A stretch of DNA of 64,000 nucleotides. Source: Octopus sinensis (lineage: Eukaryota). Location of the stretch: contig NC_043008.1 in assembly GCF_006345805.1 (NCBI RefSeq), forward strand, positions 9,052,001-9,116,000, in the 5' to 3' direction. This document shows positions 1,040-63,691 of this stretch, one piece after another. A program made the translations under genes and the position numbers. The first letter of the stretch is position 1; every line of letters starts with the position of its first letter. The notes beneath the pieces are model-generated. The model was not told the origin of the DNA and did no database searches. It worked only from the letters and a program-made list of their open reading frames with translations.

Positions 1040-2098
1040 CACTGGTTCTCAACTGGGGTCCATGTGACCTTTGAGGGTTTATATAAAATGTTATTGCTAT
1101 AGATTATGTGCAATAAATTGGTTATGCTTCTACAGTGCACAAAATATTTTAACAATTTTTTGAGTGGCTGTGTGGTAAGTAGCTTGCTTACCAACCACAT
1201 GGTTCCGAGTTCAGTCCCACTGCGTGGGACCTTAAGCAAATGTCTTCTACTGTAGCCTCGGGCCGACCAGAGCTTTGTGAGTGGATTTAGTAGACGGAAA
1301 CTGGTGTGTGTATGTATGTTTGTGTGTCTGTGTTTGTCCACCCAACATCGCTTGACAACCGATTGTGGTGTGTTTACGTGGCCGTTACTTAGCCGTTCGG
1401 TAAAAGAGACCGATAGCATAAGTACTAGGCTTACAAAAAATAAGTCCTGGGGTCGATTTGCTCGACTAAAGGCGATGCTCCAGCATGGCCATAGTCAAAT
1501 GACTGAAACAAATAAAAGAGTAAAAAGAGTAATTCCTAACAGTATTTAATTCTAAAAATATAACACTGTGCAAGAACTTTTTTTTCTTCTTTGGTCAGTA
1601 AGTATTATTTCCTATTTGCTTCTATCAAGAAACCAAAGAAAATCACGAATATACCCTACAAACTTTCCTTTTGTGACTTGGACCGCAAGTCACATTTCAG
1701 ACAGATTCAGCGCTAAGCTGCGGAAGCAGAAATATTGTTATAGCAAATATTCTGCCGAATACCATAGATTTGCTTGTGAGTTGCGTGACTTTAACCACTT
1801 GAGCATATCCCTTAATGACTGACAATATATGTATCCCTGATCATAAGCAGGAGGAATGAGGGAGTATCATGGCCATGTGTTGAGAGGGATTATTTGGGGT
1901 TGAAATAAATGTAACGGAAGCAAAGTTTTATGAAAATATTAGCAAACAAGGAATAACAGTTGCAACCCAAGGACAAAAGTTGTTTTACAAAATGTAATAG
2001 GATATTTTAAATTTTGGATGGCTATGAGGGTCCAGCCGAGTACAATATGGACCAAAGGGAGCCACAGGTAAAAGAAAAACAAAGGTTGAGAACCATTG
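1040..2098. mobile_element. Non-autonomous hAT-type MITE carrying nested insertions
   Basis: TIRs CACTGGTTCTCAACT (1040-1054) and GGTTGAGAACCATTG (2084-2098) match at 13/15. The 8-bp flanks gtcgatat and gtcatcat match at 5/8 and may be a decayed hAT TSD. SINE family A sits inside at 1162-1532. Confidence 0.65.
1162..1532 (+). mobile_element. tRNA-derived SINE, family A (CORE-like)
   Basis: A-box-like TGGCTGTGTGGTA, B-box-like GGTTCCGAGTTCAGTCCC, CORE-like ACCTTAAGCAAATGTCTT, internal (GT)n and an AAAAGAGT-repeat tail. At least 8 copies occur in the window. Confidence 0.9.
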
Positions 2099-7750: not shown

Positions 7751-8207
7751 TGTGGTAAGTAGCTTGCTTACGAACCTCATGGTTCCGGGTTCAGTCCCAC
7801 TGCGTGGCACCTTGGGCAAGTGTCTTCTACTATAGCCTCGGGCCGACCAAAGCCTTGCGAGTGGATTTGGTAGACGAAAACTGAAAGAAACCCGTATATG
7901 TATATATGTGTGTGTGTGTGTGTGTGTGTATGTGTGTGTGTGTGTCTGTGTGTCTGTGTATGTGTCTGTATTTGTGTGTGTATGTTTGTGTGTCTGTGTT
8001 TGTCCCCCAACATCGCTTGACAACCGATGCTGGTGTGTTTACGTCCCCGTAACTTAGCGGTTCGGCAAAAGTGACCGATAGAATAAGTACTAGGCTTACA
8101 AAGAATAAGTCCTGGAGGGTCGATTTGCTCGACTAAAAGCGGTGCTCCGGCATGGCCACAGTCAAATGACTGAAACCAGCAAAAAGAATAAAAGAGTAAA
8201 AGAGTAA
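7751..8207 (+). mobile_element. SINE family A, slightly 5'-truncated
   Basis: Colinear with 1162-1532 and 63692-64000. Confidence 0.9.
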
Positions 8208-8534
8208 CTGAAAAAAATATCTTATGTACTGAAGACCATCTTCTACGTGGGGGTAGTGATAGGTGTAAATAAATATACAGGTAAATATAATATAAATATA
8301 AGGTGTAAATAAATATATAGTTTCACTTTTCACCAGCGTAAATTGAAAAGCAAAATAGATGAAAAAGAAGTCTTTAATATAAACTGATATCATGGGATTT
8401 AGAAATGAGTCTCTAAGAGAGTACTTTCCGACTGATAACCACGGATATTCACCCACAAAGCTTTCACAACTATACTGGAACAAGTCATCACAAGAGAAGA
8501 TATATATACATATCAGCCATTCATGCAGAGCTAT

Positions 8535-9003
8535 CTCTTCTACTCTAGGCACAAGGCCCAAAATTTTGGGGCAGAGGGCCAGTCGATTAGATCGACTCCA
8601 GTGCGTAACTGGTACTTATTTAATCGACCCCGAAAGGATGAAAAGCAAAGTCGACCTCGGCGGTATTTGAACTCAGAACGTAACGGCAGACGAAATACTG
8701 CTAAGCATTTCGCCCGTCGCGTTAACGTTTCTGCCAGCTCGCCGCCTTCTTAAAGACAGGCGAAATACCTATTTCTTTACTACCCACAAGGGGCTAAACA
8801 TCGAAGGGACAAAGAAGGACAGAAAAAGGGATTAAGTCGATCATATCGACCCCAGTGCGTAACTGGTACTTATTTAATCGACCCCGAAAGGATGAAAGGC
8901 AAAGTCAACCTCGGCGGAATTTGAACTCAGAACGTAACGGCAGACGAAATACGGCTACGCATATCACCCGGCGTGCTAACGGGTCTGCCAGCTCGCCGCC
9001 TTC
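8535..9003 (-). mobile_element. SINE family B dimer (monomer 8535-8750 plus tail-2 copy 8756-9003)
   Basis: The reverse complement starts GGCGGCGAGCTGGCAGAA (A box), has GAGTTCAAATTCC (B box) and the central CCTTTCATCCTTTCGGGGTCGAT motif, which resembles the Meta-type SINE domain (from recall). Two different tails are present. Confidence 0.9.
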
Positions 9004-9639
9004 ACGCAGGGCTATCTTACTCGAAAGTTTCAAAGTGACAGAAGCGTAGAAAACCAAAAAGTGATATATTTTGGACTAACATTCAGCATTAAAAGCAGAT
9101 TTTACTTTGAATAATATGTTTTTGCCATACAGGATACGTAACCAACTGCACTAACATTTATATATCTAATCTGGGTTTCACAAAACCAGAAAGAACACAT
9201 CTAATTAAGAAACTACAGCTACAAGCTATAAAAGGTTTTGTGAAAATATGTTAAGCATTTCAGAAGTTTAACATGTAATAAATGTATATATGCAGATGTA
9301 GACATGAAAACATTTGTGCGTACATACATGCAGAAGTCAAAACATACATATCCACACAAGTAATTACATCCATACCTGAATACATGTATACGCATGCAAA
9401 TGCAAGCGCACATACATGTATACTTATAGATATGCATGCCCACTTGAACACACACATACCTACATACATACATTCACGCATACACATATACACACACATA
9501 CACACACATACACATACATACACACATACATGTATACTTACAGGTATGCATGCTCACTTGAACACACACACACACACACACCTACATACATACACGCATA
9601 CATACATAAACAAACATGCATATCTACGTACACTCATAC

Positions 9640-13622: not shown

Positions 13623-13978
13623 GAGGAGGTACCCAAAAGTAACAGAAAACGTTTTCTGTTTGACAAACGCGTTGTAGTTCAGGCTTCCACAGCTAGAAGC
13701 CACTTAGTGCGACCTCCAGGCATCAGTCTGCCGAACAGCGTCGTCGAGTGAAGTCGTACAGCTATGTGGTGTGTTTTTGTTTTGCAGTGCGTCTCCTCTG
13801 TTCGTCGATTTTTCCGATAACTGAAACTAAGGAACAGCATGCTTCCGCGAAATTCTGTTTTCTACTGGGGAAAAAATCGACCGAAACAGTTGTCATGCTT
13901 CAGACAGCTTACAAGGACGCTGCTATGAGCAAAACGCAAGTTTCAGAGTGGTTTTCATGCTTTAGGAATGGACATGAA
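13623..13978 (+). mobile_element. 5' fragment of a mariner transposon (left TIR plus N-terminal HTH)
   Basis: Starts after TA with GAGGAGGTACCCAAAAGTAAC. Translation KEQHASAKFCFLLGKKSTETVVMLQTAYKDAAMSKTQVSEWFSCFRNG matches the mariner/SETMAR-type N-terminal HTH pattern. Truncated by the microsatellite at 13979. Confidence 0.85.
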
Positions 13979-13990
13979 TAATAATAATAA

Positions 13991-14021
<31 letters not shown>

Positions 14022-14111
14022 ATGAGAAGAAGAAGAAGAAGAAGAAGAAGAAGAAGAAGAAGAAGAAGAAGAAGAAGAAGAAGAAGAAGAAGAAGAAGAA
14101 GAAGAAGAAGA
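13979..14111. repeat. (AAT)n(AAG)n microsatellite
   Basis: Direct reading. Confidence 0.95.
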
Positions 14112-14112
14112 A

Positions 14113-14282
14113 TATCGAAAAATAGAATGAGAACGCAGGTTCGAATTTTCCCCAAGACACCTGATGAAGGCTGAAGGGTACATCAGCCGAAACGTTGTGT
14201 TAACAACAAACAAGATGAGAACAAATATCCGTCAAATGTAAATAATATACACAATTCCTCATCTCTTAAATATAGAACTGTA
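14113..14282 (+). mobile_element. Penelope-like pLTR fragment containing a minimal hammerhead
   Basis: The same sequence recurs in inverted arrangement at 35200-35402. It contains the HHR motif at 14156-14201. Confidence 0.65.
14156..14201 (+). ncRNA. Minimal type I hammerhead motif (PLE type)
   Basis: GACAC-CTGATGA-A-GGCTGA(AGGGTACA)TCAGCC-GAAA-CG-TT-GTGTT. Stem I is 5 bp, stem II is a perfect 6 bp, palindromic ACGT replaces helix III, the triplet is GUU, and there is an extra A after A9. Confidence 0.7.
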
Positions 14283-14509
14283 AAACTAAGTCAATAAAAT
14301 AATATTGCAAAAATCCGGTTTCTTTTGGGTATCCACTCGTATATGCGATGCATAATTTACAATATTTTTTTTTATTAGTCTTACCAATATAAATAGTATA
14401 CATTTTTCTCTGGCAGAATACGTCTACGATTTCGTTCTATACATTCTAGATGACATAAAAGGTAGGTAAGTAGTATCGTACTATTGTATTAAATATATAT
14501 ATACATACG

Positions 14510-18628: not shown

Positions 18629-19475
18629 TAGTGATATTCATAAGTGGTCATGACTAACTTCAGATATTATCGACTACAAATTTCATTTTGTAGATTATAT
18701 AAATGTCAACTTTTGCAGCTCGTCCTTAGAAAATCACCCATACTTCCATTACTTCACCTCAGCTTCTATAACCATCATACAATTCCTCGGGTAAATAGAA
18801 ACAACAGAAAATATTGTTACGAGGTAGGATCACCATCAGTGTTTGCTTCATTAGGAGGAAACCTCAATTAATCGAATAATAAAACGTTTCGCGAACAGTG
18901 AGAATCAGAACGATGCCATACATATTCATTGATAATACGTTCGGGAAAATTCGAAAGTGAATTTGAATATCGCTTTTTGTATTTCATCATTGGAAAGCAG
19001 CTTCTTCCGGATGACTGTGTTTATCCCACACTCGATTCGTTAGCTTAAGGGGACGTTAGGATACTTAGTGTTACCGCATAGTTCTGTCTCTTGAGCCACG
19101 ACCACTCCGGACTAATGAATTTAACGAATTATTTGCTGACGCTGCCAAAGAATAATAAACTTCCATGAGCGAGGGGAACAGTGATAATTAGTACGATAAA
19201 ATATATTCATGATTAATGCGTTCCCGCTCTATTTTTCATATTAATGCGCTTTTCCTACGATTTATGGACAATTAACTAATAATATACATAGATAAACAGA
19301 GAAAGAGAGAGTTTGATAACACAGAGAGAGATATATACATTTATGTATATATATATATATATATTCATATATGTGTGTGCATACTTCCATCTATATGTAT
19401 GTGTATGTATGTATATATATATGTATATATATGTATATATATGTATATATATATATGTGTGTATATATATATATT

Positions 19476-19507
<32 letters not shown>

Positions 19508-19738
19508 ATTATATATATTATATATATATATATATGTGTGTGTATATAAATATGTATATATAGATATACATATATACATATATGTGTATATATACACATA
19601 CATACATATATACACACACATACATATACATATACTAGGGTGTTAGGAAATACCTACAGTGCTAGAAGTAATAGCTAAACCGCTGTAATGCTGTAGTTAA
19701 CGCACTAACGGGGATAATTACCGTTGGAAAAATGCCGA

Positions 19739-19807
19739 TCGAGAGTTTTTAATACTGATGCGTCAGTTTCGGCAATTTCCATTGCGTCATCAGTTAAAAC
19801 CGCTCGA
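19739..19807 (-). ncRNA. Type I hammerhead, minus-strand arm (probably impaired)
   Basis: TCGAG-CGG-TTTTAA-CTGATGA-CGCAA(TGGAAA)TTGCC-GAAA-CTGA(CGCA)TCAG-TA-TTAAAA-ACT-CTCGA. The core is intact but the 10.1-11.1 pair is C.C. Confidence 0.75.
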
Positions 19808-19976
19808 ACGTTCGGTTCTTTCCGGACTCGCTTCGCCATTAGTATTTGAAACATTACAAACTGCTGTTTATATTAATTTTATATATACACATTAACGAAT
19901 TACTAAGTCATCCAATAATTTGGATAATGAAAACATAAATACTAATGACGATGCGAGTCCGGTAAGAGTCAAACAT

Positions 19977-20045
19977 TCGAGCAGTCTTAACTGATGAGGT
20001 AACGAAAATTGCCGAAACTGACGCGTCAGTATTAAGAATTCTCGA
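19977..20045 (+). ncRNA. Canonical type I hammerhead ribozyme, predicted cleavage after A20031
   Basis: TCGAG-CAG-TCTTAA-CTGATGA-GGTAA(CGAAAA)TTGCC-GAAA-CTGACGCGTCAG-TA-TTAAGA-ATT-CTCGA. All core nucleotides are present, all three helices pair, the triplet is GUA, and stem I has an internal loop. Confidence 0.9.
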
Positions 20046-20236
20046 TCGGCACTTTTCGGACGATTATGGTCCCTGTTAATGTATACGATTTCATTTATGC
20101 GCGTTAACTACAGTATTAGAGCGGTGTAACTCTTATTTCTAGCAATGTAGGTATTTCCTAACACTTATCACATTTAGTGACATTTGTAATTCTCTTTGTT
20201 GGTGAAACATTGAAAACTGCTGCTTACATTAATTTT

Positions 20237-20270
<34 letters not shown>

Positions 20271-20399
20271 TGACAATTATTTTGTCGTATTTACATACCG
20301 AAATTTACCGGTAAATAATTGTTGGGTACATGAAAAACCACAGGAAAATTATTTACCATTTTTATTGTATATATATATATATATATATATAGGGGGGGG

Positions 20400-20516
20400 A
20401 GAATTCACGAAAAAAACAAAAGACGAAGACAGATGGTGTAGAAGACAAACAGATGTATTAGTATAACGTTCGGGAATTGAAAAATTCTTTAACGTTTCGA
20501 GCCTACGTTCTTCCAC

Positions 20517-20518
<2 letters not shown>
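20400..20518 (-). mobile_element. PLE-like short repeat with a variant hammerhead core (family also at 29690-29862 and 61590-61745)
   Basis: Minus strand reads ATGTGGA-A-GAAC(GTAG)GCTC-GAAA-CG-TT-AAAGA, followed by a tail (ttatactaatacatctgtttg..) shared with the other two copies. Confidence 0.65.
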
Positions 20519-20592
<74 letters not shown>

Positions 20593-20688
20593 TGTGTGGT
20601 GTGTGTGTGTGTTTATGTGTGTGTGTGTGTGGTGTGTGTGTGTGAAGACATTAACCGATGATTACTTAACCTACATTTGAAGATTTGG

Positions 20689-21162
20689 TCAGAATAAAAC
20701 CAATTTAATAGTATCAAGGTCTCCAGCTGTTAGCATACATTGATAAATTAAACTCTGCCTTGAACACTTATATCCTAGAAGACGTTTACAAAGGCGTTTA
20801 TTAACGCCTGAGTTATAATTACAATTAAGAAGATTGGTGTTAACACTGCTATTAGACCTAAGTGTTAAAACGGTGTTACTAGCTGGGTTGTTATTAATAC
20901 TACTATGTGGTACGCTAAAAGTTCTATCAATTTCTCGATTGGAACTAATTGCACCTGAAGTTCCAAATATAGGTCGAGTTACACTAGCATCTAATCCGTC
21001 ATTAATGTACACATTCTGGCCTAGATTACTGTTTACTGGCCGATGGGAAATAGCTATTCCTCTAAGAATAAACCACAGTTTTGTCATTGAAAGGTATGTG
21101 TCAAAAGACGTCAACGAAACTCCCAAGGGATTCCAAACAACACGAAAGAGAATGAAAGTATT
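20689..21162 (-). CDS. 157-codon stop-free frame; candidate terminal coding exon of unknown protein
   Basis: Non-repetitive and S/N/T-rich, ending ...RQSLIYQCMLTAGDLDTIKLVLF*. Long for chance in AT-rich DNA, but there is no clear acceptor and no recognised domain. Confidence 0.3.
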   Translation of the reverse strand, partial: NTFILFRVVWNPLGVSLTSFDTYLSMTKLWFILRGIAISHRPVNSNLGQNVYINDGLDASVTRPIFGTSGAISSNREIDRTFSVPHSSINNNPASNTVLTLRSNSSVNTNLLNCNYNSGVNKRLCKRLLGYKCSRQSLIYQCMLTAGDLDTIKLVLF

Positions 21163-22259: not shown

Positions 22260-22970
22260 GCAGAAACGGTATGCTGTACACCTTGGCATTCGCACCCAGA
22301 AGCTTCAGTATGAACATTTCAGAGTGTTTGGGTATCAATCTGAGAACATGTACCGAGAGTGATAAAAATCGAACATCCACTCAGCATTATGGTGGTTGAA
22401 GTGATCGCTAATGATGGCAACGTTATGCTTACGTTTGTCTTCTCACAAAGCCCAAAACCTCAACTCGGAGGCCTACATCAAGTGCCTGGAGAAGGTAGTG
22501 TTGCCCTGGGTCAAGAGGGTGGTTGTTGGAAGACCCTATATCTGGCAACAGGATTCTGCACCATGCCACACAAGCAGAAGAACCTAGTCATGGTTGTCAG
22601 ACAATCTCTGCGACCAAATCACCCCTAACATCTAGCCACCTAACTCCTCTGACTGCAAGCAACTTTATTATGTGTGGATCGCAGTTGAGCGAGAGACCAA
22701 CAAATCTCTTTGTAACAGTAAAGATGAACTGAAGGCAAGGATTATGGCATAATTCACCAAATTAAACAAGGAGACCATCCAGAAGACTTGCAGGAGATTC
22801 CGAAGTTGTCTGGAGGCTGTGGTTGAAGCCAATGATGATTTTATTGAATAAATTTACTCTTTAGTATTTCAAGATATTTTTATGTAATTTTGATAAATAT
22901 ATCTGTTAAAATGAGATGTCAGTGTTATTTTTATTTTTGCATAAATTAGGCAACAGTTTATTGACTGCAC

Positions 22971-27225: not shown

Positions 27226-27910
27226 TATATATATATACATATATACATATATACATATACATATACACACACATATATATATATATATATAATATATATA
27301 TATATATATTATCAAAACTGGTGGTATGAACTGTAAAATGAACACCAGTGATATTTCAAAATGAGGATACAGGGGAAAAAATGAGTTTGGTATTTGCTTC
27401 CTTTTTGCTTCACTGCCATCAAAGTATATTGATTATTTTCAAAAGTATTTTTTTTTTTATTATTTCAAAACCATTCAAATGTCGATAAAAGTCTTGTATG
27501 GTTGGGAAATTAGCTTTGCAATGCCATGGTTCTAAGTACAATCTCACTGGGAAACATCTGAGGAAGGAGTTTTCTGTTGAAGTCTCAGGAGTAAATTTTT
27601 GCTATTGCACTTGTCTCTCTTTAAAAAAGGACTACGCATTGAAATAGTACAAATCAAACATCGTATTTCTTTATTTTTTAAGCTTGGCATTTATACTATC
27701 ATTCTCTTTAGCTGAACCGCTAAGTTACGAGGACGTAAAACAAACTAGCACCGATTGTCAAGCGATAGAGCGAATGTCAAAGAGACACAAACACGTACAC
27801 ACACAAACATACACACACTCACACACACGCACACATGCAATCATAACCACAAGTTTGGAACATTTTTTAAAAAATCAAAATTATAATGCCCAATTCGAAT
27901 TATGCCCATA

Positions 27911-28329
27911 GGCGTAGGAGTGGCTGTGTGGTAAGTAACTTGCTTACGAACCACACGATTCCAGGTTCAGTCCAATTGCGTGGCACCTTGGGCAAGTGTC
28001 TTCTACTATAGCCTTAGGCAGACCAAAGCCTTGCGAGTGGATTTGGTAGACGGAAACTGAAAGAAGCCCGTCGTATATATGTATATATATGTATGTGGGG
28101 GGTGTATATGTTTGTGTGTTTGTGTTTGTTCCCTCCAACATCGCTTGACAACCGACGCTGGTGTGTTTACATCCTCGTAACTTAACGGTTCAGCAAAAAG
28201 AGACCGATAGAATATGTACTAGGCTTACAATGAATAAGTCCTGGGGCCGATTTGCTCGACTAAAGGCGGTGCTCCAGCATGGGCACAGTCACATGACTAA
28301 AACAAGTAAATGAGTAAAAAAGAGAGTAA
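27911..28329 (+). mobile_element. SINE family A, full length
   Basis: Starts GGCGTAGGAGTGGCTGTGTGGTAAG and is colinear with the other copies. Confidence 0.9.
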
Positions 28330-28440
28330 TTCGATTCAAATATATACAACGTATATTAACAGGCATTTAATATAAAAATGCTAGTTTTCACATCTATGTG
28401 CCAGACCTAATGCAATAAGCACATCCTTTCCAATAGCAAC

Positions 28441-28630
28441 GTTTAGCAGTATTTCGTCTGCCGTTACGTTCTGAGTTCAAATTCCGCCGAGGTCGACTTT
28501 GCCTTTCATCCTTTCGGGGTCGATAAATCTAGTACCAGTAACGCACTGGGATCGAAGTAATCAACTTAATACCTTTGTCTGTCCTTGTTTGTCCCCTCTA
28601 TGTTTAGCCCCTTGTGAGCAATAAAGAAAT
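28441..28630 (+). mobile_element. SINE family B, 5'-truncated, tail 2
   Basis: GTATTTCGTCTG..GAGTTCAAATTCC..CCCCTTGTGAGCAATAAAGAAATA. Confidence 0.85.
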
Positions 28631-29044
28631 AAACGTTAACGAATTTCGGTATACTCCCTATTTCAATTTTTCTTTTAAGTAGATATATAAGAAAATTCTT
28701 GTAATACAGCATATTTTATTACTATTTCATTATTATCGTTAATATCATTATTAATATTTCTTTTTTTCACACTTCTGCAATCCACTAGACTACTGCTTAT
28801 CTTTCGTTAAAGAAGCGTTAAGCTTTTATAATACCAGCTTAAGTTCTCAAATACATCGCCATGCATTGCGTGCAGATATAAAAGAAAGACTTAGCTTGCT
28901 AAATAAAACTGCCAAACATGAATAAAAACTCTTAGAAAAACTAAGCTTTAAAAACAATGAAATAAAGAGAAATTATTCATAGCATTCACAGGCAACAAAT
29001 ACCGTCAAACAAAATCGTCCACCAGCGTGTGAATAATTTTATGA

Positions 29045-29258
29045 GGGCGACGAGCTGGCAGAATCGGTAGCATGCTGGGCAAAATATTCAGCAGCATTTC
29101 GTCTGACTTCACGTTTCTGAGTTCGAATTCCGTCGAGGTCGACTTTGCCTTTTATCCTTTCGGATCGATAAAATAAGTACCAATTAAGCATTGGAGTCGA
29201 TGTAAGTGATTTATGTCTTCCCCTGAAATTGCTGGCCTTGTGCCAAAATCTGAACCAA
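29045..29258 (+). mobile_element. SINE family B
   Basis: GGCGACGAGCTGGCAGAA head, B box and central motif. Confidence 0.85.
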
Positions 29259-29303
29259 TATTTGATTAAATTTATTGGGTTTATTCAAGAGAGATGTCTA
29301 GTG

Positions 29304-29335
<32 letters not shown>

Positions 29336-29434
29336 CATCCGTGCATCCTATATAATCAACTATATATAGTAATTGACCATATAAAGACCGGGTGAAAATT
29401 AATGAGACTCCAGTCATACATCGCTCAGATAATT

Positions 29435-29690
29435 GTTTCAAATTTTAGCAGAACGCCAGCAATTTTCATTAGAAGAAGTTTGTCGATTACTTTGACACCA
29501 ATGCTTAGCTAGTACTTTACTTTATCGATCAGAAGTTAAAAGGCAAAGTTGACCACGACGGTATTTCAGTTCAGAATGTGAAGCACCGGAAGAACTGCCA
29601 CTAAGCATTTTGTCCGGTGCGGTAACGATTCTTCTTTCTTTATTGCCCACAAGGGGTTAAACACAGAGAGGGACAAACAAGACAAATTTT
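29435..29690 (-). mobile_element. Diverged SINE family B with a tail-2 remnant
   Basis: Reverse-complement similarity to the central motif and head; gcccacaaggggttaaacacagagagggacaaac tail fragment. Confidence 0.7.
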
Positions 29691-30765: not shown

Positions 30766-31778
30766 CAACAAGTCCTTCCGTGTGTTTTGTTTTGTTTTTG
30801 TTATTTGTTGGTTTTTTTTTTTCATTTTTTTCCTGATAACAACCCTAATTGTGAGCGTTACATTTTATATAACAAGAAATATTTAGAATTACCTCAGTTC
30901 CTGCACTGAGCTATACAAACAGATGACGCCCCCATAAACATCAAACAGTTTTGGTTAAACCGATGTTGATGATGAGGAATTATAACATCAAAAAATCGTA
31001 TCTCGCATCCTCCAAATAACTCCCATTCCACCACCCACTACCATCCCTCACACAGTAGTCAACATCTTTTGTGGTGAAAACGTACACTATAACAATAATA
31101 CGGGTTTTATTTATTCCCTAACACTTTTCTCTTCAGATGTTTCCATGTATACATATTGTATGGTGTCTGTTTAGAAGTATTTCCGTGAATAAAAGTGGTC
31201 GGGTGGCTTGTTTGTATGTTTTTTTTTTATTTTGCTTTTGCATTGTATTCTTTTACTTTTGTTTGCTTCTTTGTTTTTGTTTTCTTTTTTGCGAAAAAAA
31301 TTGTCTGAACGTATTATTTCTTTATGACACGAAAATCAATGGCAAAATTAATTTCGCGTTACAAAAATTTCGCGTTACGATAAGGTGGTCAGGAATGCTT
31401 TATTTCCATAATGCAGTAGATTTATCTATGTGTGTGTCTATGTATGTGTGTGTATGTGTGTCTACGTGCGTATATATATATGTGCATATATATGCATATA
31501 TGTATGTATTCATATATATACATATATATATGCATATAAATATATATCTGCATATATATATATATATATATTTAAGTAGGTGAATGAATTATCCTATGTT
31601 TATCGTCAGCATGGAAAATTCGTTTAACCGAAACCTGGGTAGCAAATTCACGTCAGAAAACACGGTTGAAGCGACCTGTCAAGGGTAGAAACTCCAGGTT
31701 CATGTGTAGAAATTTGTGTGTTGTATATGAATAAATGAAAGAATGGAGTCGAACGAAGATGTTAACAAAATTCCTTTA

Positions 31779-31860
31779 CTCTCGACACATGTTTCGAAGA
31801 CAGCATATTTTCATTCCGAAGGAATAAAGGGTGCATTATGCAATCTTCTCATCAGGAAAG
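31779..31860 (-). ncRNA. Type I hammerhead with long stem II, GUC cleavage triplet
   Basis: CTTTC-CTGATGA-GAAGATTGCATA..TATGCTGTCTTC-GAAA-CATGTG-TC-GAGAG. Stem II is 12 bp with one U.U; stem I is 5 bp with one wobble. Confidence 0.75.
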
Positions 31861-32385
31861 AAAAGGAGCCTCTCTCGACCACAAGACAAACAAAAATTTC
31901 GATGATTGCCTACATTGTAAACAAAGCGATAATGAGCGTTTTTTTTTTTAAATCCGTTAGAATTGACGTCAAAAATGGATAGTAGGAGGAAGAGAAGGGA
32001 TAAAGTAAAAATAGGTAGGGGACAGTATGTTTGCTGTATGTTTGCTGTATGTATGGAAATGTGTGGGTGTGTGCTTGTGTTAATGAGTGCGTGTTAATGA
32101 GTGCGTGAGTTTGTGTATGTGTGTATAACTGTGTGTCATTGTGTGTGTGAGAGAGAGACAGACGTCATAGATAGATAGCAGTAAGGGGAGGTATAAAGGA
32201 GCAATAGGTAGGGAACAAGTGGAGAGGGAAGTGTATGTTGATTAAAAGAATGATCGAAGGCTTAGGAAAGAATTTCTCTATAGCAGTGGGGTGGACGTGA
32301 AGCTAATTGTTCAAACCACAGTAACTATCGTTATCATTTATATGAGTAGAAAGTGTGTTTCTGCCAGCGTTTACATTTGTACGAT

Positions 32386-32466
32386 TTTTCTATGATGAGA
32401 AGATTGCATAATTCACCCTTTATTCCTTCGGAATGAAAATATGCTGTCTTCGAAACATGTCGAGAG
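32386..32466 (+). ncRNA. Mirror copy of the 31779-31860 hammerhead with a damaged core
   Basis: ttttc-TATGATGA-GAAGA..TCTTC-GAAA-CATG-TC-GAGAG; C3 is lost. Confidence 0.55.
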
Positions 32467-32514
32467 TAAAGGAATTTTGTTAACATCTTCGTTCGACTCC
32501 ATTCTTTCATTTAT

Positions 32515-32525
32515 TCATATATATA

Positions 32526-34312: not shown

Positions 34313-35199
34313 TACATATATAGATATAGATATAGATATACATATACATATATAGATATATATGATGTTTATGTATGCGTGTGTAATTTGTTGAAAATTC
34401 CTAATGTACTTGTCAAGTTAAAAACCTTTCTCTGTTCCTAAGACAGCAATCAATAAATAAATAAATGGATAAATTCATAGATAAATAAATAAATAAAACA
34501 TTTCAACATTTTCATTCGCAGCAGTAATAACTTTTTTGCTTCCCACATTTCACAACACCAATAACAATATGAAGAACAACACTAAGGACAACTTATACTT
34601 TCACTTTCTTTTCCAGTTGTGTGTATTAGAGAAAATGTAAAACAAAAACTAACCTTTTCTTTCGGATACAATAAATCACAAGAAAAGGCGTGGGCCGCAG
34701 TTTACAGCTGCCGCCGTGGTGGTCGTGGACACTGGTTATTCGTAAAATTGTGCTAAAAACACTCAGATCCTCTCGCGTTGTAATGCATAACGAGTGGCTG
34801 GCAAGCGCTAAAAGGGCAGAAAAAGCAAACAAATATTGCTAAACGAAACCAACGTAGTGCCACGATATTTTGCAATGCCTAGGAATTTACTTTCAAGAAA
34901 GACTTTTTCATTTGTAATTCTTTCTCGCGAAGTGACCGTGTGGATCTTCCGCAAATCTTTGCTATCAATTTCCACGTTTCTCTTCCATAAAGAACTTTTC
35001 CTTTCATTATTAATGCTTGTTGTTGCCCAAATTTGGCTCATCCGCTGAAACATTGCTCCTGTCTTACCAATACCGTTGCCTGCATCATTTTCTATGCGTC
35101 CATCACTGCTGATCACGCCGCCGAGAGATCAGAAGTTATTGACATCCTACACAACTTCTGTGCACTGAAGATGGTAGTTCCATTTGTAATATTAATCTG

Positions 35200-35402
35200 C
35201 AAACATTATTTACATCATTTACATTATCTATATTTGACGGATATTTGTCCCCATCTTGTTTGTTGTTAACACAACGTTTCGGTTGATATATCCTCCAGCC
35301 TTTATCAGGTGTCTTGGAGACATTTCGAACAAGATGAGGACAAATATACGTCAAATGTAAATAATGTACATAATTCCTCATCTCTTAAATATAGAACTGT
35401 AA
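35200..35402. mobile_element. Inverted PLE-like pLTR pair (same family as 14113-14282) inserted in the RTE relic
   Basis: 35233-35260 and 35328-35355 are inverted repeats. The minus strand at 35266-35317 carries a degenerate HHR (CTGATAA core). Confidence 0.7.
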
Positions 35403-36324
35403 TCTGCAAACCTTGGTTATTTTACAACTAATTTTGACACCGAGCTTTATTGTTTGTTCTTTGAACTTGGTAGTTAGTTCATGCAGCTTCGTCCTTGTCT
35501 CTTTTAGTAGCATGATGTCATCGGCAAGGGCCAAGTGAGCAAAATTCTTTTCGTTTTACTCCAACGAAGACTTGCATTACTCAAATGAATTTCTGTTTAT
35601 ATAAAAAAAAAACAGCTTCTAGTAGGAAAACAAACGAGAGTACATGGTCCTGACACCAATAATGATGCTAAAGTTGTTAGTAAAGCATCTGTTCTGGCAT
35701 AGTAGTTAGTCTTTGTAAAGATTCATGGAGATGTTTAGATATTGAGACCATATACTTAAGTGATCTTTTGTTACCTTAACCATTCTATCAAATGTGTTTT
35801 TTACATTAGAAAATTGTTCGGTTCCGCTGGAGCGGAATCCTGCTTGTTCTTTCCGCGGGCTTGCATCAACGTTCTGTCGAATTCTGTTCAATATTATAAA
35901 GCAAAGAACTTTTCTTGGAAGAGAGAAACGTAATTCCCAGTTTTGCAATCTGCCAGGTTATCCTTCTTGAGAGTTGCACAATAACTCCTTTCCCCCAGTC
36001 AATATAAAAATTGTTGGGGGTAATATTTTTCTACTCCCTCAGGCGCTTACCTCTAGATTTTGAGGAACTGAGTAGCTTGAAAGCAAATCGGCTGTTAGAA
36101 GAACAAGGACCTAGTCTACGGTTGATAGCTTTCCCTGTTGAAAAGCATTGAATTCATATGTTGTAAACAAATAAATGTGTCCTCATTTTTACATTAGAGC
36201 CCTTACATATACGTAGCTCGTTGTCCCAAATTAGAATTTCACGGGTTTAGCAGTTGATAGATAAATATATTGGTTGTAGACACATTGCAATTCCGCCAAC
36301 ACGATACGAACTATCGATCTATCC

Positions 36325-36420: not shown

Positions 36421-36865
36421 ATTGATCTATCCTGTTGTTCTTCAGGATTATCAACTTGATTATCATCCAGCTTCTCCCAGATTCCTTTATCAAGTCTGAC
36501 CAGAAAGGCTGCAGGTTTAGACATGCTATCCTCTGCTATCATTACCTTTGCTCTTTTGTATTCATCCTGTTTATGACATATATTTTTCGTTTCACCTACT
36601 ACTCGGCACAATGATCGTATTCTTTACAGCAAACAGGAGATGGGGTAACATTCATACTTTCCTATGAGCATTTGTTGCAAAATAGATGTGGAATTATTCC
36701 AAAGGAATAGGTTCGAGTCCTTTGTAAAGAGTTTTAAGTTAAGTTAAACTGTAAGTTTTCAAGACTTATAATAAATAATATTGTTTAAAGTCTGAATGAG
36801 GTGGTCGAAATTTTAGTCGGTAGATTGTAAATCTATTTATAAGTGTTTTACTTGCTCATACTCTC

Positions 36866-37248
36866 TAATCTTTTACTCTTTTACTTGTTTCAGTCATTTG
36901 ACTGCGGCCATGCTGGAGCACCGCCTTTAGTCGAGCAAATCGACCCCGGGACTTATTCTTTGTAAGCCCAATACTTATTCTATCGGTCTCTTTTGCCGAA
37001 CCGCTAAGTGACGGGGACGTAAACACACCAGCATCGGTTGTCAAGCAATGCTAGGGGGACAAACACAGACACACAAACATATACACACACACTTATATAT
37101 ATATACATATATACGACAGGCTTCTTTCAGTTTCCGTCTACCAAATTCATTCACAAGGCAATTCCGCCGACACGATACGCAGTGGGACTGAACCCGGAAC
37201 CATGTGGTTGGTTAGCAAGCTACTTACCACACAGCCACTCCTGCGCCT
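36866..37248 (-). mobile_element. SINE family A with an internal deletion
   Basis: Reverse complement of the family A sequence; the ~40 bp CORE-like segment is replaced by a short unrelated stretch. Confidence 0.9.
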
Positions 37249-39035
37249 CATGGTTTTATATTTTAATTAAAATATTAAATTGCAAATTTAAAGATATATA
37301 ATTTATGTTAAAACTTGGTAAGGTTAAAGTAAGCATCATCGCAGCCACAACTTTTTCCAGGAAATTATCTTTTAATTCACTGTTCCTCTTTATCAGTAGT
37401 ACGATACATTTACAATAAGATAGATGTTGGTTCATACATGTCTTGCCCTCTTTCTAGTCTGAAATAAAATGATACAGATTTCTTCTAACTATATCTAAAG
37501 GAACGTCTGGATGCAAATCAATGGATATTAATCACTAGAAAAGTGAATCCAAACACCCAATCTTCAACTACTGTCATCGAACAAATCTTATTAATAGCCA
37601 CCATTATCATGACCACAACCGCTTTTATCATTATCACACTATTATCACTAACCTAATCTTCTCGTGTATGTCACTACCATTACTACTACTACAACTACCA
37701 ACACCAACATCACCAGCACCAACCACTACCACCACTACCACCACCACCGCCACCGCCACCCTCACAACTAGTAACACCAGCAAATACTTCAAAGAACTGC
37801 TTTCAGTAAATAAGCATTTCACTATAAAGTGACATTTCATGCTTGGCTTGCATGCTTCTATCTAAACCACTTCAGTACTGTTATAGGCACCCATCGTTCC
37901 CCCCTCCTTGCCACTTTGACACGGTTCGATTCAGCAACTTCTTACCTTTCTTTCTTTCTGTCTTTCTTTCTTTCTTTTTTCATATTCATCTTACTTTAAT
38001 CAAATTCCTTAACTCCTCAACTATTCTATCCTTATTCATTTCTGTTTAATGTTCATCTCTACTTGTATTCTTTATGTTCAAATAAACGTTAGTTTTCCAA
38101 TCCTTCGGCAGTTCTTCATCGTTAAGTTTACTCGTTAAGTCTTTAGTTTATTCTTCATATTCACTTCATTACATTCAATTTAATATTTATTGTTTGTTTG
38201 TTTTTTTTCTTTAATTCTTTATATTCAGTTTTAATTCTTCTGCTCTTTATCTTCGGTATTTGTTCTCAATTCTTCTTTCCCCCCCCCTCTTTATTTTAAC
38301 TTCAATATTTTTTTTTTCATATCTTCTCCTTTCAAATCAATAATAATATTGTTTCTCTGAAAAACCATTCACGAAATATGTCTGTTAAAGAAAACTTCAG
38401 CAAAAGTAATTTAATTTTGTGAACGTTCATACGAGTCAGCAGAATCAAATAAGAGAAAAGGATTATCAAGAATTTTCCTAAGACGCCTATTTTCGTCTCC
38501 AGATTTCTTTAACTACCAGCATATAACGTAAGTAAAGAAAAGAACCATCTCTGCAGCTGCTGTTGTTGTTTCTTAACCGCCAGCTTAACCCCGATCGTAT
38601 AAACCTATGATCATAAGCATTCCAACCATGACCAATTCACCTTTTTTTTTTTTTCACTTTTCTGACATTATGATTCAAGAATAACATTAACCGATGTGTT
38701 CTGTTTTTTCTTGTCTTTTTTTCTGACTGCTCCAAGGGAAAATTGCAGTTTAGTAGCAGTAAGACATTTTATCGTTGCTGGTGCCAGCAAGAATATATGC
38801 GTTGAGTCTTGGAACTAATGATACAGTTTCTAAAAGGAGTGTAGCTGCAACTCGCAGAAATTCTGCTTATGCAAAAACGTTGCAGTGCTGAATTGGAAAT
38901 CCACTGCAATTTCCATTGGGAAATGTGCCAAGGATGACTGTGGGACGACAATTATCGAGACGGAAATTATCTTAAACTACCTCTCACTCTCACCCTCTCC
39001 CGAAACAATCAGTTTTATTATGGTTTCTCTCTCTT

Positions 39036-45000: not shown

Positions 45001-46173
45001 TTTGTCTCATAGTATTATTTGAGAAATCTTTACCAGAAACAAAATACTGAAGCCACTCTTTCAATGATGATAGATATCAATCTATAACGAATAGATAAAT
45101 ATTGTACCTTCTATGTTTTATTCTGATTGTTGAGTCAAGATTCTGGGAATACGAACATGACTAAGTCAACAATAATTAGAAATTAAATATTTCCTCAAAT
45201 TTAAAAAGGAATATTTATCCTTATTTTTAGCTTAAATTGTGACATCTTCTTGGCTGTCACAATATCGCAGATTAAATTTTTTTTTTAAATAATTTTACAG
45301 CTTAGAAATAATTTTCTGTAATGATGGAAATGCGTTTTAGTAACGGGGTGTATCGGTAATATTATATTCAGGATTACTGCCCGTGGGTCACGTAAAGGTA
45401 AACGGAGAGACTTTTGCTGCCTTTTAATCGCTTAATTTTGCTTTAAACATGCACATTCATTCTCGATAATACTATGATATACATATTCATACCTAAGACG
45501 ATAAAATAGTTCACGGATCCCTCATCGTTACATGAATCTGGTTAAGGTTAATAACACTCTTGTTTTCCAGGAATATCCAAACCAAAGGTTTTTCCACATC
45601 ATCTGTAAGCATCCCTACGTGCAGGCTCATAGTCACAGCTACACAACCTATAATCACAACTATCTACAAATACCTGTACTTAATGGTGAGATCGCAAAAT
45701 TTTAACAACTAGTTTTTTCAAGTAACTGAAAAATTTAAACACCGGTTCTATGTAAAGAATTCCAAATTGTCAAAAAAAAAGCATATATAACGAAGGCTGC
45801 GAACTAACTGAAAGAATTTAAAATATTGGTTAACCCGTGTTATTTTTGTTATTCCCTTTCTTATTTCCTACGAAGCAAACTGCGTTCTAGACTGAAATGG
45901 GAAGCAAGGTGCCGTTGCTGTATTCTATTTCTGTTATTTTTTACAATTACTTTAAATATATTTGACACAAAAATTGACACAAAAAATCTCTAGCAAAAAT
46001 GTTTACAGTGAAAATATTTCGGGCAGTTTTTTTTTCCAGTGAAAAAATGTTTGTGCCAAAATTATTTGACAGAAAGTTAACTAATTTTCATTTTTATAAG
46101 AGCTTCTTTTTTAAAAAATAACCATTTCAAAGGCACTGGTGCTAACCAACTTCAACTCATCCTGTACGACATT

Positions 46174-46556
46174 AATCTTTTCTACTCTAGGCACAAGGCC
46201 CGAAATTTTGAGGGAGGGGGCCAGTCGATTATATCGACCCCAGTACTCAGCTGATACTTCATTTATCGATCCCGAAAGAATGAAAGGCAAAGTTGACCTC
46301 GGTGGAATTTGAACTCAGAATGTAAAGACAGACGAAATACCGCAAAGCATTTTGCCCGGCATGCTAAAGTTTCTTATTTCTTTACTGTCCACAAGGGGCT
46401 ACACACAGAGGGGACAAACAAGGACAGACAAACGGATTAAGTCGATTATATCGACCCCAGTACGCAAATGATACTTCATTTATCGACCCCGAAAAGATGA
46501 AAGGCAAAGTCGACCTCGGCAGAATTTGAACTCAGAACATAAAGACAGAGGAAATT
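46174..46556 (-). mobile_element. SINE family B dimer (tail-2 unit joined to a tail-1 unit)
   Basis: Two central motifs; junction ..GTAAAGAAATA|AGAAACTTTAGC on the sense strand. Confidence 0.85.
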
Positions 46557-48377: not shown

Positions 48378-48590
48378 GGAGTTGACAGAATGGTTAGCTC
48401 GCCGGGCAAAATACATAGCAGCATTCCAGCCATCTTCGCGTTCTGAGTTCAAATTCCGCCGAGATCAACTTTGCCTTTCATTATTTCGGAGTCGATAAAT
48501 TAAGTAACGGGGAAACACTGAGATCGATATAATCGACTAATACCCCCTCCCCGCCACCTCCAAAATTTCAGTCTTTGTGTCTTCAGTAAA
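48378..48590 (+). mobile_element. Diverged SINE family B
   Basis: B box GAGTTCAAATTCC, central motif and tail 1. Confidence 0.8.
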
Positions 48591-48680
48591 ATGGTCTATT
48601 TTTCCTGCAGAAGGAATCTTCGAATAATTTCTCAAATTCATTCTAATTGTTACTCATATCTTATATATTATATATTATTG

Positions 48681-49443
48681 TTTTCTACTCTAGGTACAAG
48701 GCCTGAAATTTTTGGAGAGGGGGTGAATCGATTAGATCTACCTCAGTATGCAACTGGTACTTAATTTATCGACCCCGAAAGGATGAAAGGCAAAGTCGAC
48801 CTCGACAGAATTTGAACTCAGAACGTAAAGACAGACGAAATACCTATTTCTTAATTGCCCACAGGAGGCTAAATATAGAGACGACAAACAAGGACAGACA
48901 AAGGGATTAATTCGATTGTATCGACCCCAGTGCGTCACTGGTACTTAATTTATCGACCCCGAAAGGATGAAAGGCAAAGTCGACCTCGGCGGAATTTGAA
49001 CTCATAACGTAGCGGCAGACGAAATACCTATTTCTTTACTACCCACAAGGGACTAAACACAGAGAGGACAAACAAGGACAGACAAAGGGATTAAGTCGAT
49101 TATATCGAACCCAGTGCGTAAGTGGTACTTATTTAATCGACCCCGAAAGGATGAAAGGCAAAGTCGACCTCGGCGGAATTTGAACTCATAACGTAGCGGC
49201 AGACGAAATACCTATTTCTTTACTACCCACAAGGGGCTAAACACAGGGAGGACAAACAAGGACAGACAAAGGAATTAAGTCGATTATATCGACACCAGTG
49301 CATAACTGGTACTTAATTTATCGACCCCGAAAGGATGAAAGGCAAAGTCGACCTCGGCGGAATTTGAACTCAGAACGTAGCGGCAGACGAAATACCGCAA
49401 AGCATTTCACCCGGCGTGCTAACGATTCTACCAGCTCGCCGCT
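48681..49443 (-). mobile_element. SINE family B tetramer: one head, three 184 bp tandem units, terminal tail-1 unit
   Basis: CCTATTTC occurs at 48843, 49027 and 49211, and the head junction is at 49395 (period 184). The A box is present only once, at 49425-49443. Confidence 0.92.
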
Positions 49444-63614: not shown

Positions 63615-63691
63615 ATAGATCGGCCACAACTACCTTTATCTAAATACTCTACGGCTCGTTCGGATTTATGATTTACTGACACACACACATA

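What the first reader, a model, noticed from the sequence alone, without database searches (positions are those of the whole stretch)
19640..20164. Foldback element with two opposite-polarity hammerhead ribozymes, one in each inverted arm
Seen: a 525 bp element made of two ~210-230 bp inverted arms and an 89 bp spacer, with no ORF. Each arm contains a complete type I hammerhead reading outward (- strand 19739-19807, + strand 19977-20045). The arms differ at many positions, yet stem I shows a compensatory change (TCTTAA/TTAAGA vs TTTTAA/TTAAAA) and both CUGAUGA and GAAA cores are intact. Established: PLE pLTRs and retrozymes carry HHRs; retrozymes have them in direct repeats, and PLEs can have inverted pLTRs. 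Inference: this is either a non-autonomous PLE derivative or a MITE-like foldback built from a ribozyme. Transcription from either direction would give an RNA that must choose between a ~200 bp dsRNA hairpin and a self-cleaving fold, which makes it a candidate conformational switch or a bidirectional cleavage cassette.
Basis: partly seen in the sequence, partly recalled or inferred. Interest (0 to 1): 0.9.

Follow-up and report, generated by a model that had tools for sequence, protein, structure and literature searches.

The report
Head-to-head hammerhead retroelement copies
Two diverged copies of a short retroelement that carries a hammerhead ribozyme sit head to head next to a microsatellite; this layout is already described for Penelope-like retrotransposons, so it is most likely an ordinary transposon relic and not an RNA switch.

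Summary
The inverted repeat is real. The arms are 19640-19847 and 19937-20164, 84.6% identical with one 20-nt indel, separated by an 89-bp spacer, with no coding capacity. The right arm holds a canonical type I hammerhead (0 equally good hits in 1500 simulated windows). The left arm keeps the core but has a C.C mismatch at the conserved 10.1-11.1 pair. No Rfam family reaches its gathering score.

The "foldback element" reading is weakened. The spacer's first half is a copy of DNA lying 38 nt beyond the right arm. There is no target-site duplication (TSD) and no other copy in the window.

Two unrelated hammerhead-bearing repeats in the same window show the same head-to-head, 3'-ends-out layout (31724-32521 and 35205-35402). 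The second has a 9-10-bp TSD around the whole unit and a 34-nt extension on one arm only. This matches published Penelope-like element (PLE) insertions: both strands primed, a 30-40-bp tail, microsatellite targets, and the hammerhead near the 3' end.

Best reading: a decaying, non-autonomous PLE-type or retrozyme-like double insertion. A read-through RNA would form a hairpin of about -284 kcal/mol that buries the ribozyme, so a switch is unlikely. The nine differences between the two ribozymes mostly preserve the fold (P about 0.012), which suggests past selection on the ribozyme in the element family. Known kind; modest interest.

The parts
19640..19847 (-). Left arm: one copy of the short hammerhead-bearing element. 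Sense is on the - strand, 3' end at 19640, 5' end at 19847.
   Evidence: Alignment with the right arm, 84.6% identity. Abuts the (TA/CA)n microsatellite 19300-19636.
19739..19807 (-). Left-arm hammerhead motif. Core intact (CUGAUGA 19793-19787, GAAA 19770-19767). C.C mismatch at 10.1-11.1. Predicted cleavage between 19753 and 19752.
19848..19936 (.). Spacer (S1). Its first 44-45 nt are a direct copy of 20203-20247. The second half is only weakly collinear with 20313-20336.
   Evidence: Family D3; 0/1000 shuffles reach the score for the first half, 33/1000 for the second.
19937..20164 (+). Right arm: second copy of the element. Sense is on the + strand, 5' end at 19937, 3' end at 20164. Carries an extra 20 nt at 20082-20101.
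19977..20045 (+). Right-arm canonical type I hammerhead. CUGAUGA 19991-19997, GAAA 20014-20017, cleavage between 20031 and 20032, which is 133 nt from the arm's 3' end.
20165..20202 (+). 38-nt stretch between the right arm and the flank copy S2. Candidate PLE 'tail', a 30-40-bp extension present at one end only.
   Evidence: Position between the arm end and the start of D3 copy 2. No similarity to the rest of the element. Analogy with the 34-nt one-sided extension in pair 3. Inference.
20203..20247 (+). S2: flank sequence duplicated in the spacer. Contains a (CA)n(TA)n microsatellite from 20236. Homology may continue to about 20340.

Best explanation
This is a relic of retrotransposition by the machinery of a Penelope-like element (PLE). 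A short RNA of about 210-270 nt that carries a type I hammerhead, and encodes no protein, was copied into a microsatellite-rich site. It is either a retrozyme-like non-autonomous element or the pLTR part of a PLE.

The PLE enzyme nicks both DNA strands and primes reverse transcription from each. The result is two copies lying head to head, with their 3' ends, and therefore the ribozymes, pointing outward. One copy carries the optional 30-40-nt tail. A piece of the target (S) was duplicated during resolution and ended up between the copies.

The locus has since decayed to about 15% divergence between the arms. The left ribozyme is probably dead. The right one may still cleave if it is transcribed alone.

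The ribozyme belongs to the element's life cycle, not to this locus. In a read-through transcript the two arms would simply form a long double-stranded hairpin.

Shown: the anatomy, the motif, the flank duplication, and the recurrence of the layout in the window. Inferred: the PLE enzyme as the agent, the tail, a single event, and loss of activity.
For: 1. Orientation. Both hammerheads read outward and the 5' ends face each other.
2. The same layout occurs twice more in this window with unrelated hammerhead-bearing repeats.
   - Pair 2: 31854-31724 (-) and 32393-32521 (+), 97.7% identical, with the right copy cut off inside the ribozyme core and running into (TA)n.
   - Pair 3: 35330-35220 (-) and 35328-35402 (+). 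The arms overlap by 3 nt at the junction (35328-35330, no spacer), have different 5' truncation points, and the right arm is 34 nt longer at its 3' end. The whole unit is flanked by the direct repeat (A)TCTGCAAAC at 35195-35204 and 35402-35411, so it was one insertion event.
   - All three pairs are divergent. If adjacent copies had random orientations this would be (1/4)^3, about 0.016.
3. Literature match.
   - PLE insertions are 5'-truncated, often have an inverted 5'-truncated copy next to the 5' end, have a 30-40-bp tail at one end only, prefer microsatellites such as (TA)n, and carry the hammerhead in the pLTR near the 3' end (PMC8557442).
   - A purified PLE protein cleaves and extends both strands, and the tail equals the distance between two reverse-transcription start sites (PMC11167929).
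   - Animal retrozymes are proposed to be non-autonomous PLE derivatives (bioRxiv 10.64898/2026.07.22.740005).
4. The left junction abuts a (TA/CA)n tract, and S2 contains a (CA)n(TA)n tract.
5. S1 starts exactly at the left arm's 5' end and S2 exactly after the 38-nt stretch. This ties both arms and the duplication to one event.
6. Arm divergence (15.4%) equals S1/S2 divergence (15.6%).
7. The window holds at least three further hammerhead motifs of PLE type, against 0.04 expected by chance, so such elements are common in this genome.
Against: - No other copy of this family could be obtained. There is none in the window. Two metagenome scans and one viral scan found nothing. Protein-database look-ups with arm ORFs and a neighbouring ORF found nothing.
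- No reverse transcriptase or GIY-YIG ORF is linked to the arms, so the tie to PLEs rests on architecture and analogy.
- The duplicated target piece lies between the arms, not outside both as in pair 3. The simple both-strand model does not predict this.
- This hammerhead has a stable 5-bp helix III and no unpaired base before helix II. In that respect it differs from the 'minimal' hammerheads typical of animal PLE pLTRs (PMC4209133) and resembles those of invertebrate retrozymes.
- Other non-hammerhead repeats in the window also form inverted pairs, so inverted pairs are not exclusive to hammerhead elements.
Confidence: 0.68

Rival explanations
1. Two independent insertions of the same short hammerhead element into one microsatellite hot spot, in opposite orientation. 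The right copy (with tail) made a long target duplication of about 90 bp (S1/S2). The left copy landed next to it at another time.
For: - Both arms end at the same inner position, as expected if that is the true 5' end of a short full-length element. The family at 14139 and 35330 shows such a fixed 5' end.
- The differences between the two ribozymes preserve the fold: two compensatory pairs and only 1 disruption against 4.8 expected, P=0.012. That is what two already diverged source copies would show.
- S1 and S2 bracket only the right arm plus the 38-nt stretch.
Against: - The left arm's 5' end coincides exactly with the start of S1. That is an unlikely coincidence for an unrelated event.
- No other copy of the family lies within 64 kb, so two chance hits 89 bp apart are improbable unless the family is very abundant.
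- Pairs 2 and 3 show that such pairs arise in single events.
Confidence: 0.17
2. A MITE-like or foldback DNA transposon whose long terminal inverted repeats happen to be built from a ribozyme-bearing sequence, moving as one 525-bp unit.
For: Perfect 19-nt inverted termini and long inverted arms. The window contains another clean palindromic element at 59732-59919, so foldback-type repeats exist in this genome.
Against: - No TSD of any length from 2 to 10 bp at the arm ends.
- No second copy in the window.
- At least half of the spacer is copied from the local flank, which a mobile unit would not carry.
- The arms differ by 15% and a 20-nt indel.
Confidence: 0.05
3. A locus kept by the host. 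It would be either a bidirectional self-cleaving cassette or conformational switch, or a hairpin-RNA gene whose roughly 200-bp double-stranded stem feeds small-RNA or RNA-editing pathways.
For: The pattern of substitutions in the two ribozymes preserves the structure (P about 0.012). The right ribozyme has no disruptive change, although a copy that had taken 4-5 random changes would stay intact only 2-4% of the time. The predicted hairpin is very stable.
Against: - The ribozyme is no better conserved than the rest of the arm (86.8% vs 83.5%, Fisher p=0.83).
- The left ribozyme has lost the 10.1-11.1 pair and prefers another fold by 8.7 kcal/mol.
- The hairpin stem itself has decayed to 85% with a 20-nt bulge.
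- The ribozyme-sense arm is always transcribed after its complement.
- The finding was picked because the motif looked intact, which inflates the apparent conservation.
- There are no expression data.
Confidence: 0.05
4. A single insertion that was later duplicated in inverted orientation by DNA repair or replication (fold-back priming), with no role for the retroelement machinery in making the second arm.
For: Arm divergence equals the divergence of the S1/S2 duplication, which is compatible with one local rearrangement. Templated insertions from nearby DNA are typical of error-prone end joining (established knowledge).
Against: Both arms stop at the same outer base next to unrelated flanks. 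Two other families show the same arrangement, one of them inside a TSD. That is better explained by the insertion mechanism than by three separate repair accidents.
Confidence: 0.05

Closest known systems
Penelope-like element (PLE) insertions with pseudo-LTRs and an adjacent inverted 5'-truncated copy (Evgen'ev & Arkhipova 2005; Craig et al. 2021, PMC8557442; Frangieh et al. 2024, PMC11167929)
   Same: Head-to-head copies with 3' ends out. Hammerhead roughly 100-170 nt from the 3' junction. A one-sided extension of 30-40 nt. A microsatellite target. No clear TSD in repeat-rich DNA.
   Different: No RT/GIY-YIG ORF is present or linked. Both copies are only about 210-230 bp. A target-derived piece lies between the copies. 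The hammerhead has a long helix III, unlike the minimal PLE type.
Metazoan non-LTR retrozymes (Cervera & de la Pena 2020, PMC7229834; Li et al. 2026 preprint)
   Same: Short (170-400 nt), AT-rich, non-coding element with a type I hammerhead that has a stable helix III and an internal loop in helix I. Proposed to be mobilised by PLEs. Solo 'monomer' copies are common.
   Different: Retrozymes are defined by direct tandem repeats, so that two ribozymes excise a monomer that is then circularised. Here the two copies are inverted, so no transcript carries two sense ribozymes.
Minimal PLE hammerheads (Cervera & de la Pena 2014, PMC4209133; Lunse et al. 2017)
   Same: Type I topology, conserved core, and G10.1-C11.1 in the right arm. 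The helix III sequence CUGACGCGUCAG is a perfect palindrome, so a dimeric form is possible.
   Different: No unpaired base between A9 and 10.1. Helix III is 5 bp rather than 0-2 bp. Helix I is longer and has an internal loop. True minimal motifs do occur elsewhere in the window (14150-14202).
MITEs and foldback transposons
   Same: Long inverted arms, short size, no ORF.
   Different: No TSD, no other copies seen, spacer derived from the flank, arms 15% diverged.
Hairpin-RNA (hpRNA) loci made from inverted repeats
   Same: A read-through transcript would fold into a stem of about 200 bp.
   Different: No evidence of expression or conservation. The stem is already degraded.

Membership tests
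Hammerhead ribozyme, type I | Conserved core C3 U4 G5 A6 N7 G8 A9 ... G12 A13 A14, an A15.1-U16.1 pair, and H17 not G | tested here: met
   Both arms: CUGAUGA, GAAA, A-U, and A at position 17.
Hammerhead ribozyme, type I | Three helices around the core, with the open end in helix I and a G10.1-C11.1 closing pair in helix II | tested here: inconclusive
   Right arm: all 22 pairs standard, and it passes the strict descriptor. Left arm: C.C at 10.1-11.1, and it fails the descriptor.
Hammerhead ribozyme, type I | Match to a curated Rfam hammerhead model at its gathering score | tested here: not met
   No hit at gathering score. Best scores are 24.4 bits against a cut-off of 48.5 (right) and 12.7 bits (left). 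Only the best hit per clan is shown, so the Hammerhead_1 score was not seen.
Hammerhead ribozyme, type I | Self-cleavage | not testable with these tools
   Needs in vitro transcription. The nearest-neighbour model puts the catalytic fold 2.6 kcal/mol (right) and 8.7 kcal/mol (left) above the minimum-energy fold.
Penelope-like element (autonomous) | ORF with telomerase-like RT and GIY-YIG endonuclease | tested here: not met
   No ORF in the element. Arm translations have no homologues. Nine neighbouring ORFs have no Pfam hit.
PLE-type insertion (autonomous or non-autonomous) | Inverted copy adjacent to the 5' end, with 3' ends outward | tested here: met
   The same layout occurs in two other hammerhead families in the window.
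PLE-type insertion (autonomous or non-autonomous) | Optional 30-40-bp tail at one end only | tested here: inconclusive
   A 38-nt stretch (20165-20202) lies between the right arm and S2. It cannot be shown to be element-derived without other copies. A clear 34-nt one-sided extension is seen in pair 3.
PLE-type insertion (autonomous or non-autonomous) | Insertion into AT-rich or microsatellite DNA | tested here: met
   The left arm abuts (TA/CA)n 19300-19636. S2 carries (CA)n(TA)n from 20236.
PLE-type insertion (autonomous or non-autonomous) | Sequence homology of the arms to the pLTR of a PLE in the same genome | not testable with these tools
   No eukaryotic genome collection could be searched by DNA. 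Scans of the available collections found nothing.
Non-LTR retrozyme | Two or more direct tandem units, each with a sense hammerhead | tested here: not met
   The two copies are inverted. No direct repeat of the arm exists in the window.
Non-LTR retrozyme | Unit of 170-400 nt, low GC, non-coding | tested here: met
   Arms are 208 and 228 nt. The window is 33% GC.
MITE / foldback DNA transposon | Target-site duplication of fixed length directly outside the terminal inverted repeats | tested here: not met
   The flanks ...ATACTAGG and TTATCACA... share no short repeat. The only shared word is a microsatellite 11-mer far from the ends.
MITE / foldback DNA transposon | Many dispersed copies with the same internal structure | not testable with these tools
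   None in 64 kb. The source genome is not available.

The most novel reading that the evidence does not exclude
The inverted pair is not just debris. The host, or the element family, maintains paired outward-reading hammerheads. Transcripts that start in the centre would self-cleave in both directions. Read-through transcripts would instead make a long double-stranded hairpin for small-RNA or editing pathways. The fold-preserving substitutions would then be the trace of that selection.
Probability: 0.05. Interest if true: 0.6.

Novelty: new member of a known kind. Interest (0 to 1): 0.25.

Why it matters
If the main reading is right, the locus is one more example of how PLE-type retrotransposition leaves inverted double copies. 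It also shows that short, non-coding hammerhead elements with a stable helix III exist in this (probably invertebrate) genome, next to minimal PLE hammerheads.

The useful points are practical:
- Inverted hammerhead pairs should be read first as an insertion signature, not as a designed switch.
- The window offers three such pairs of different ages (98%, about 90% and 85% identity). Together they document the both-strand priming, tail and TSD features seen so far mainly in a few model PLEs.
- The fold-preserving differences between the two ribozymes support the view that the ribozyme is under selection in the life cycle of these elements.

Tried and rejected
- Rfam at gathering score on the whole window: nothing. 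At relaxed threshold the 651-nt region only matched long plant miRNA hairpin models far below their cut-offs. I read those as generic hits to any long hairpin and discarded them.
- ARAGORN on 19000-21000: no tRNA-like part, so this is not a tRNA-derived SINE.
- Search for other copies. blastn of the element, arm, spacer and flank against the window found only itself and the D3 repeat. Two metagenome pattern scans found nothing, using the ribozyme with its helix III and then the 19-nt terminus plus 8 nt. One viral scan found nothing.
- Indirect route through spurious ORFs. A profile of the two arm translations against 5.8 billion proteins found nothing. The neighbouring 145-aa ORF 20689-21126 found nothing by exact look-up or homology. 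No orthologous or allelic locus could therefore be fetched.
- Pfam on nine complex ORFs of the window: no hits.
- Sequence similarity between the arms and the other hammerhead-bearing stretches: none beyond the core, so these are separate families.
- Similarity of the 38-nt stretch to any part of the element: none.
- The source organism was not determined. I ran no further search on a mariner fragment, because it would not have identified the species.

Full report
**What is there**

Positions 19640-20164 form an inverted repeat. The arms are 19640-19847 and 19937-20164, separated by 89 bp.
- Over 208 aligned positions, 176 are identical (84.6%; 22 transitions, 10 transversions).
- The right arm carries an extra 20 nt at 20082-20101.
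- The outer 19 nt (GTGTTAGGAAATACCTACA) are identical in both arms.
- blastn finds no other copy of the arm, spacer or whole element in the 64-kb window.
- There is no ORF, only stop-free stretches of 51-71 codons. A profile of these found no relative among 5.8 billion proteins.
- ARAGORN finds no tRNA-like part.

**The ribozymes**

The right arm (+ strand, 19977-20045) reads UCGAG-CAG-UCUUAA CUGAUGA GGUAA-CGAAAA-UUGCC GAAA CUGA-CGCG-UCAG U A UUAAGA-AUU-CUCGA.
- This is a complete type I hammerhead. Helix I is 6 bp plus a 3x3 internal loop plus 5 bp. Helices II and III are 5 bp each. G10.1-C11.1 is present. Cleavage is predicted after GUA, between 20031 and 20032.
- A home-made descriptor finds it. 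Hits of equal quality (6/5/5 bp) occurred 0 times in 1500 first-order Markov simulations of the window. A loose version occurred 0.041 times per window.
- The left arm (- strand, 19739-19807) keeps CUGAUGA, GAAA and helices I and III. Its helix II begins with C.C instead of G-C, so it fails the descriptor.
- G10.1-C11.1 is described as highly conserved in natural hammerheads (PMC4209133). I infer that the left copy is impaired.
- ViennaRNA places the catalytic secondary structure 2.6 kcal/mol (right) and 8.7 kcal/mol (left) above an alternative fold, in which CUGAUG pairs with the 3' strand of helix III.
- Rfam gives no hit at gathering score. In 96-nt stretches the right arm scores 24.4 bits for Hammerhead_3 (cut-off 48.5, different register) and 17.1 bits for RAGATH-1-hammerhead in the type I register. 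The left arm scores 12.7 bits.
- The motif is therefore real by structure and by chance statistics, but it is not recognised by curated models.

**Conservation between the two ribozymes**

Identity in the 53-nt minimal ribozyme is 86.8%, against about 83.5% in the rest of the arm (Fisher p=0.83). There is no excess conservation. The pattern of changes, however, is not random. The 69-nt motifs differ at nine positions:
- one turns U.G into C-G;
- three lie in loops;
- one is disruptive.

Nine randomly placed substitutions give 4.8 disruptions on average, and P(1 or fewer)=0.012. The second compensatory pair was recognised after the fact, and the locus was flagged because it looked intact. I therefore treat this as suggestive only.

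The simplest reading is that part of the divergence arose in active source copies under selection for the ribozyme. Such families are reported to be 'full of covariations' (PMC4209133).

**The spacer is not element-specific**

The first 44-45 nt of the spacer (19847-19891) are an 84% direct copy of 20203-20247. None of 1000 shuffles reach the alignment score. The second half is weakly collinear with 20313-20336 (33/1000 shuffles).

The order along the + strand is:
- microsatellite
- left arm (3' to 5')
- S1
- right arm (5' to 3')
- a 38-nt stretch
- S2

S1 begins exactly at the left arm's inner end, and S2 begins exactly after the 38-nt stretch. S1/S2 divergence (7/45, 15.6%; 95% CI 6-29%) equals arm divergence (15.4%; CI 11-21%).

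There is no short direct repeat at the outer arm ends. A unit that transposes as a foldback would not be expected to carry a copy of its local flank in its loop.

**The same layout recurs in the window**

A search for CTGATGA...GAAAC and the descriptor found further hammerhead motifs.
- 14150-14202 (+) is a textbook 'minimal' PLE hammerhead. It has an unpaired A before G10.1, a 6-bp helix II, the palindrome ACGU in place of helix III, and a 5-bp helix I (compare PMC4209133).
- 31779-31860 (-) and 59365-59450 (+) have short palindromic helices III.

blastn of these regions against the window gave two more pairs.

Pair 2:
- 31854-31724 (-) and 32393-32521 (+) are 97.7% identical, and both read outward.
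- The right copy is cut off inside the core (aUGAUGAG) and ends in (TA)n.

Pair 3:
- 35330-35220 (-) and 35328-35402 (+) are both copies of the 145-nt element at 14139-14283.
- They meet head to head, overlapping by 3 nt, and have different 5' truncation points.
- The right arm is 34 nt longer at its 3' end.
- The whole unit is flanked by (A)TCTGCAAAC at 35195-35204 and 35402-35411. That is a TSD around both arms, so the pair arose in one insertion event.

Three unrelated families therefore all show divergent pairs. If neighbouring copies had random orientations, this would happen with probability about 0.016.

The window also contains inverted pairs of non-hammerhead repeats, so inverted pairs as such are not exclusive to these elements.

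**Match to the literature**

- Craig et al. 2021 (PMC8557442) describe PLE insertions as highly 5'-truncated and often in partial tandems. [quoted passage not shown] A 30-40-bp tail is often present at one end only. They report a bias for microsatellites such as (TA)n and hammerheads in the pLTRs.
- Frangieh et al. 2024 (PMC11167929) show that a purified PLE protein cleaves and extends both DNA strands. They also show that the tail corresponds to two reverse-transcription start sites in the RNA, roughly 90 nt downstream of the hammerhead cut.
- In the 14139 family the cut-to-3'-end distances are about 52 and 86 nt. In the finding they are 133 nt, and 171 nt if the 38-nt stretch is a tail.
- Cervera & de la Pena 2020 (PMC7229834) and Li et al. 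2026 describe short non-coding type I hammerhead elements (retrozymes), proposed to be mobilised by PLEs, with many solo monomers.
- Penelope-like elements are reported in octopus genomes (PMC13282606, PMC8967140). I could not verify that the window is from a cephalopod.

**Mechanism**

The best-supported account is a PLE-type integration that primed cDNA on both strands. The template was a short hammerhead-bearing RNA, or two units of a multimeric transcript. The event duplicated about 90 bp of target and was followed by neutral decay.

The placement of S1 between the arms is not predicted by the simple model. It needs either an extra nick or a templated fill-in during joining. Alternatively, S could be part of the element as a partial tandem unit. 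This remains open.

**Function**

Because both ribozymes read outward, any read-through transcript makes the antisense arm first and the ribozyme-sense arm second. The 40 nt upstream of the ribozyme can already zip onto the first arm. The full hairpin is predicted at about -284 kcal/mol, against -16 kcal/mol for the ribozyme fold. A thermodynamic or kinetic 'choice' is therefore unlikely. Only a transcript starting in the centre would free a ribozyme, and there is no evidence for one.

**Verdict**

- The PLE-derivative reading is supported. The MITE and switch readings are not.
- The locus is a new member of a known kind, of modest interest.
- Its main value is that the window documents three such pairs of different ages.

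Noticed in passing
window 14139-14283 (+): Solitary 145-nt element with an intact 'minimal' PLE-type hammerhead (GACAC CUGAUGA A GGCUGA..UCAGCC GAAA CG U U|GUGUU, 14150-14202). It starts right after an (AAG)n tract (13980-14110) and a mariner-like fragment. Rfam does not detect it.
   Followed up: partly
window 35195-35411: Head-to-head pair of the 14139 family: 35330-35220 (-), with a decayed core CUGAUAA, and 35328-35402 (+), truncated after the ribozyme. 3-nt overlap at the junction, a 34-nt one-sided 3' extension, and a 9-10-bp TSD (A)TCTGCAAAC around the unit.
   Followed up: yes
window 31724-32521: Young head-to-head pair (97.7% over 131 nt) of a third hammerhead family. Full motif at 31779-31860 (-). 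The right copy, 32393-32521 (+), is truncated inside the core and runs into (TA)n. 538 bp lie between the copies.
   Followed up: partly
window 59365-59450 (+): Another type I hammerhead-like motif with a palindromic helix III (ACGAUCGU) and a 43-nt loop II. (TA)n starts 137 nt downstream of the predicted cut, close to the 133 nt in the foldback arms. No partner copy in the window.
   Followed up: partly
window 59732-59919: Near-perfect 188-bp palindrome (98.9%, about 94-bp arms, no spacer) directly after a long (TA)n tract. No hammerhead motif. Could be a recent MITE or foldback insertion.
   Followed up: no
window 48728-49396, related copies at 8533-9004, 28442-28632, 29040-29681, 46171-46555: SINE-like repeat arranged as a 184-bp tandem array (3.6 units, 91% matches), with many dispersed and inverted copies. 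Long imperfect foldbacks made of it lie at 29060-29632 and 48433-48831.
   Followed up: no
window 57157-57801: 683-nt self-inverted alignment at 65.6% identity. Nature unknown.
   Followed up: no
window 13697-13978 and 22344-22625: Mariner/Tc1-like transposase fragments (motifs ...KTQVSEWFSCFRNG... and ...WQQDSAPCHTS...), seen only by eye in translations.
   Followed up: no
window 1162-1535, 7751-8206, 27906-28332, 36859-37253, 63688-64000: A second abundant repeat of about 300-400 bp, in both orientations, at 75-91% identity. Together with frequent (TA)n, (CA)n and (CATA)n tracts and 33% GC, it marks a repeat-rich animal genome. The species was not determined.
   Followed up: no
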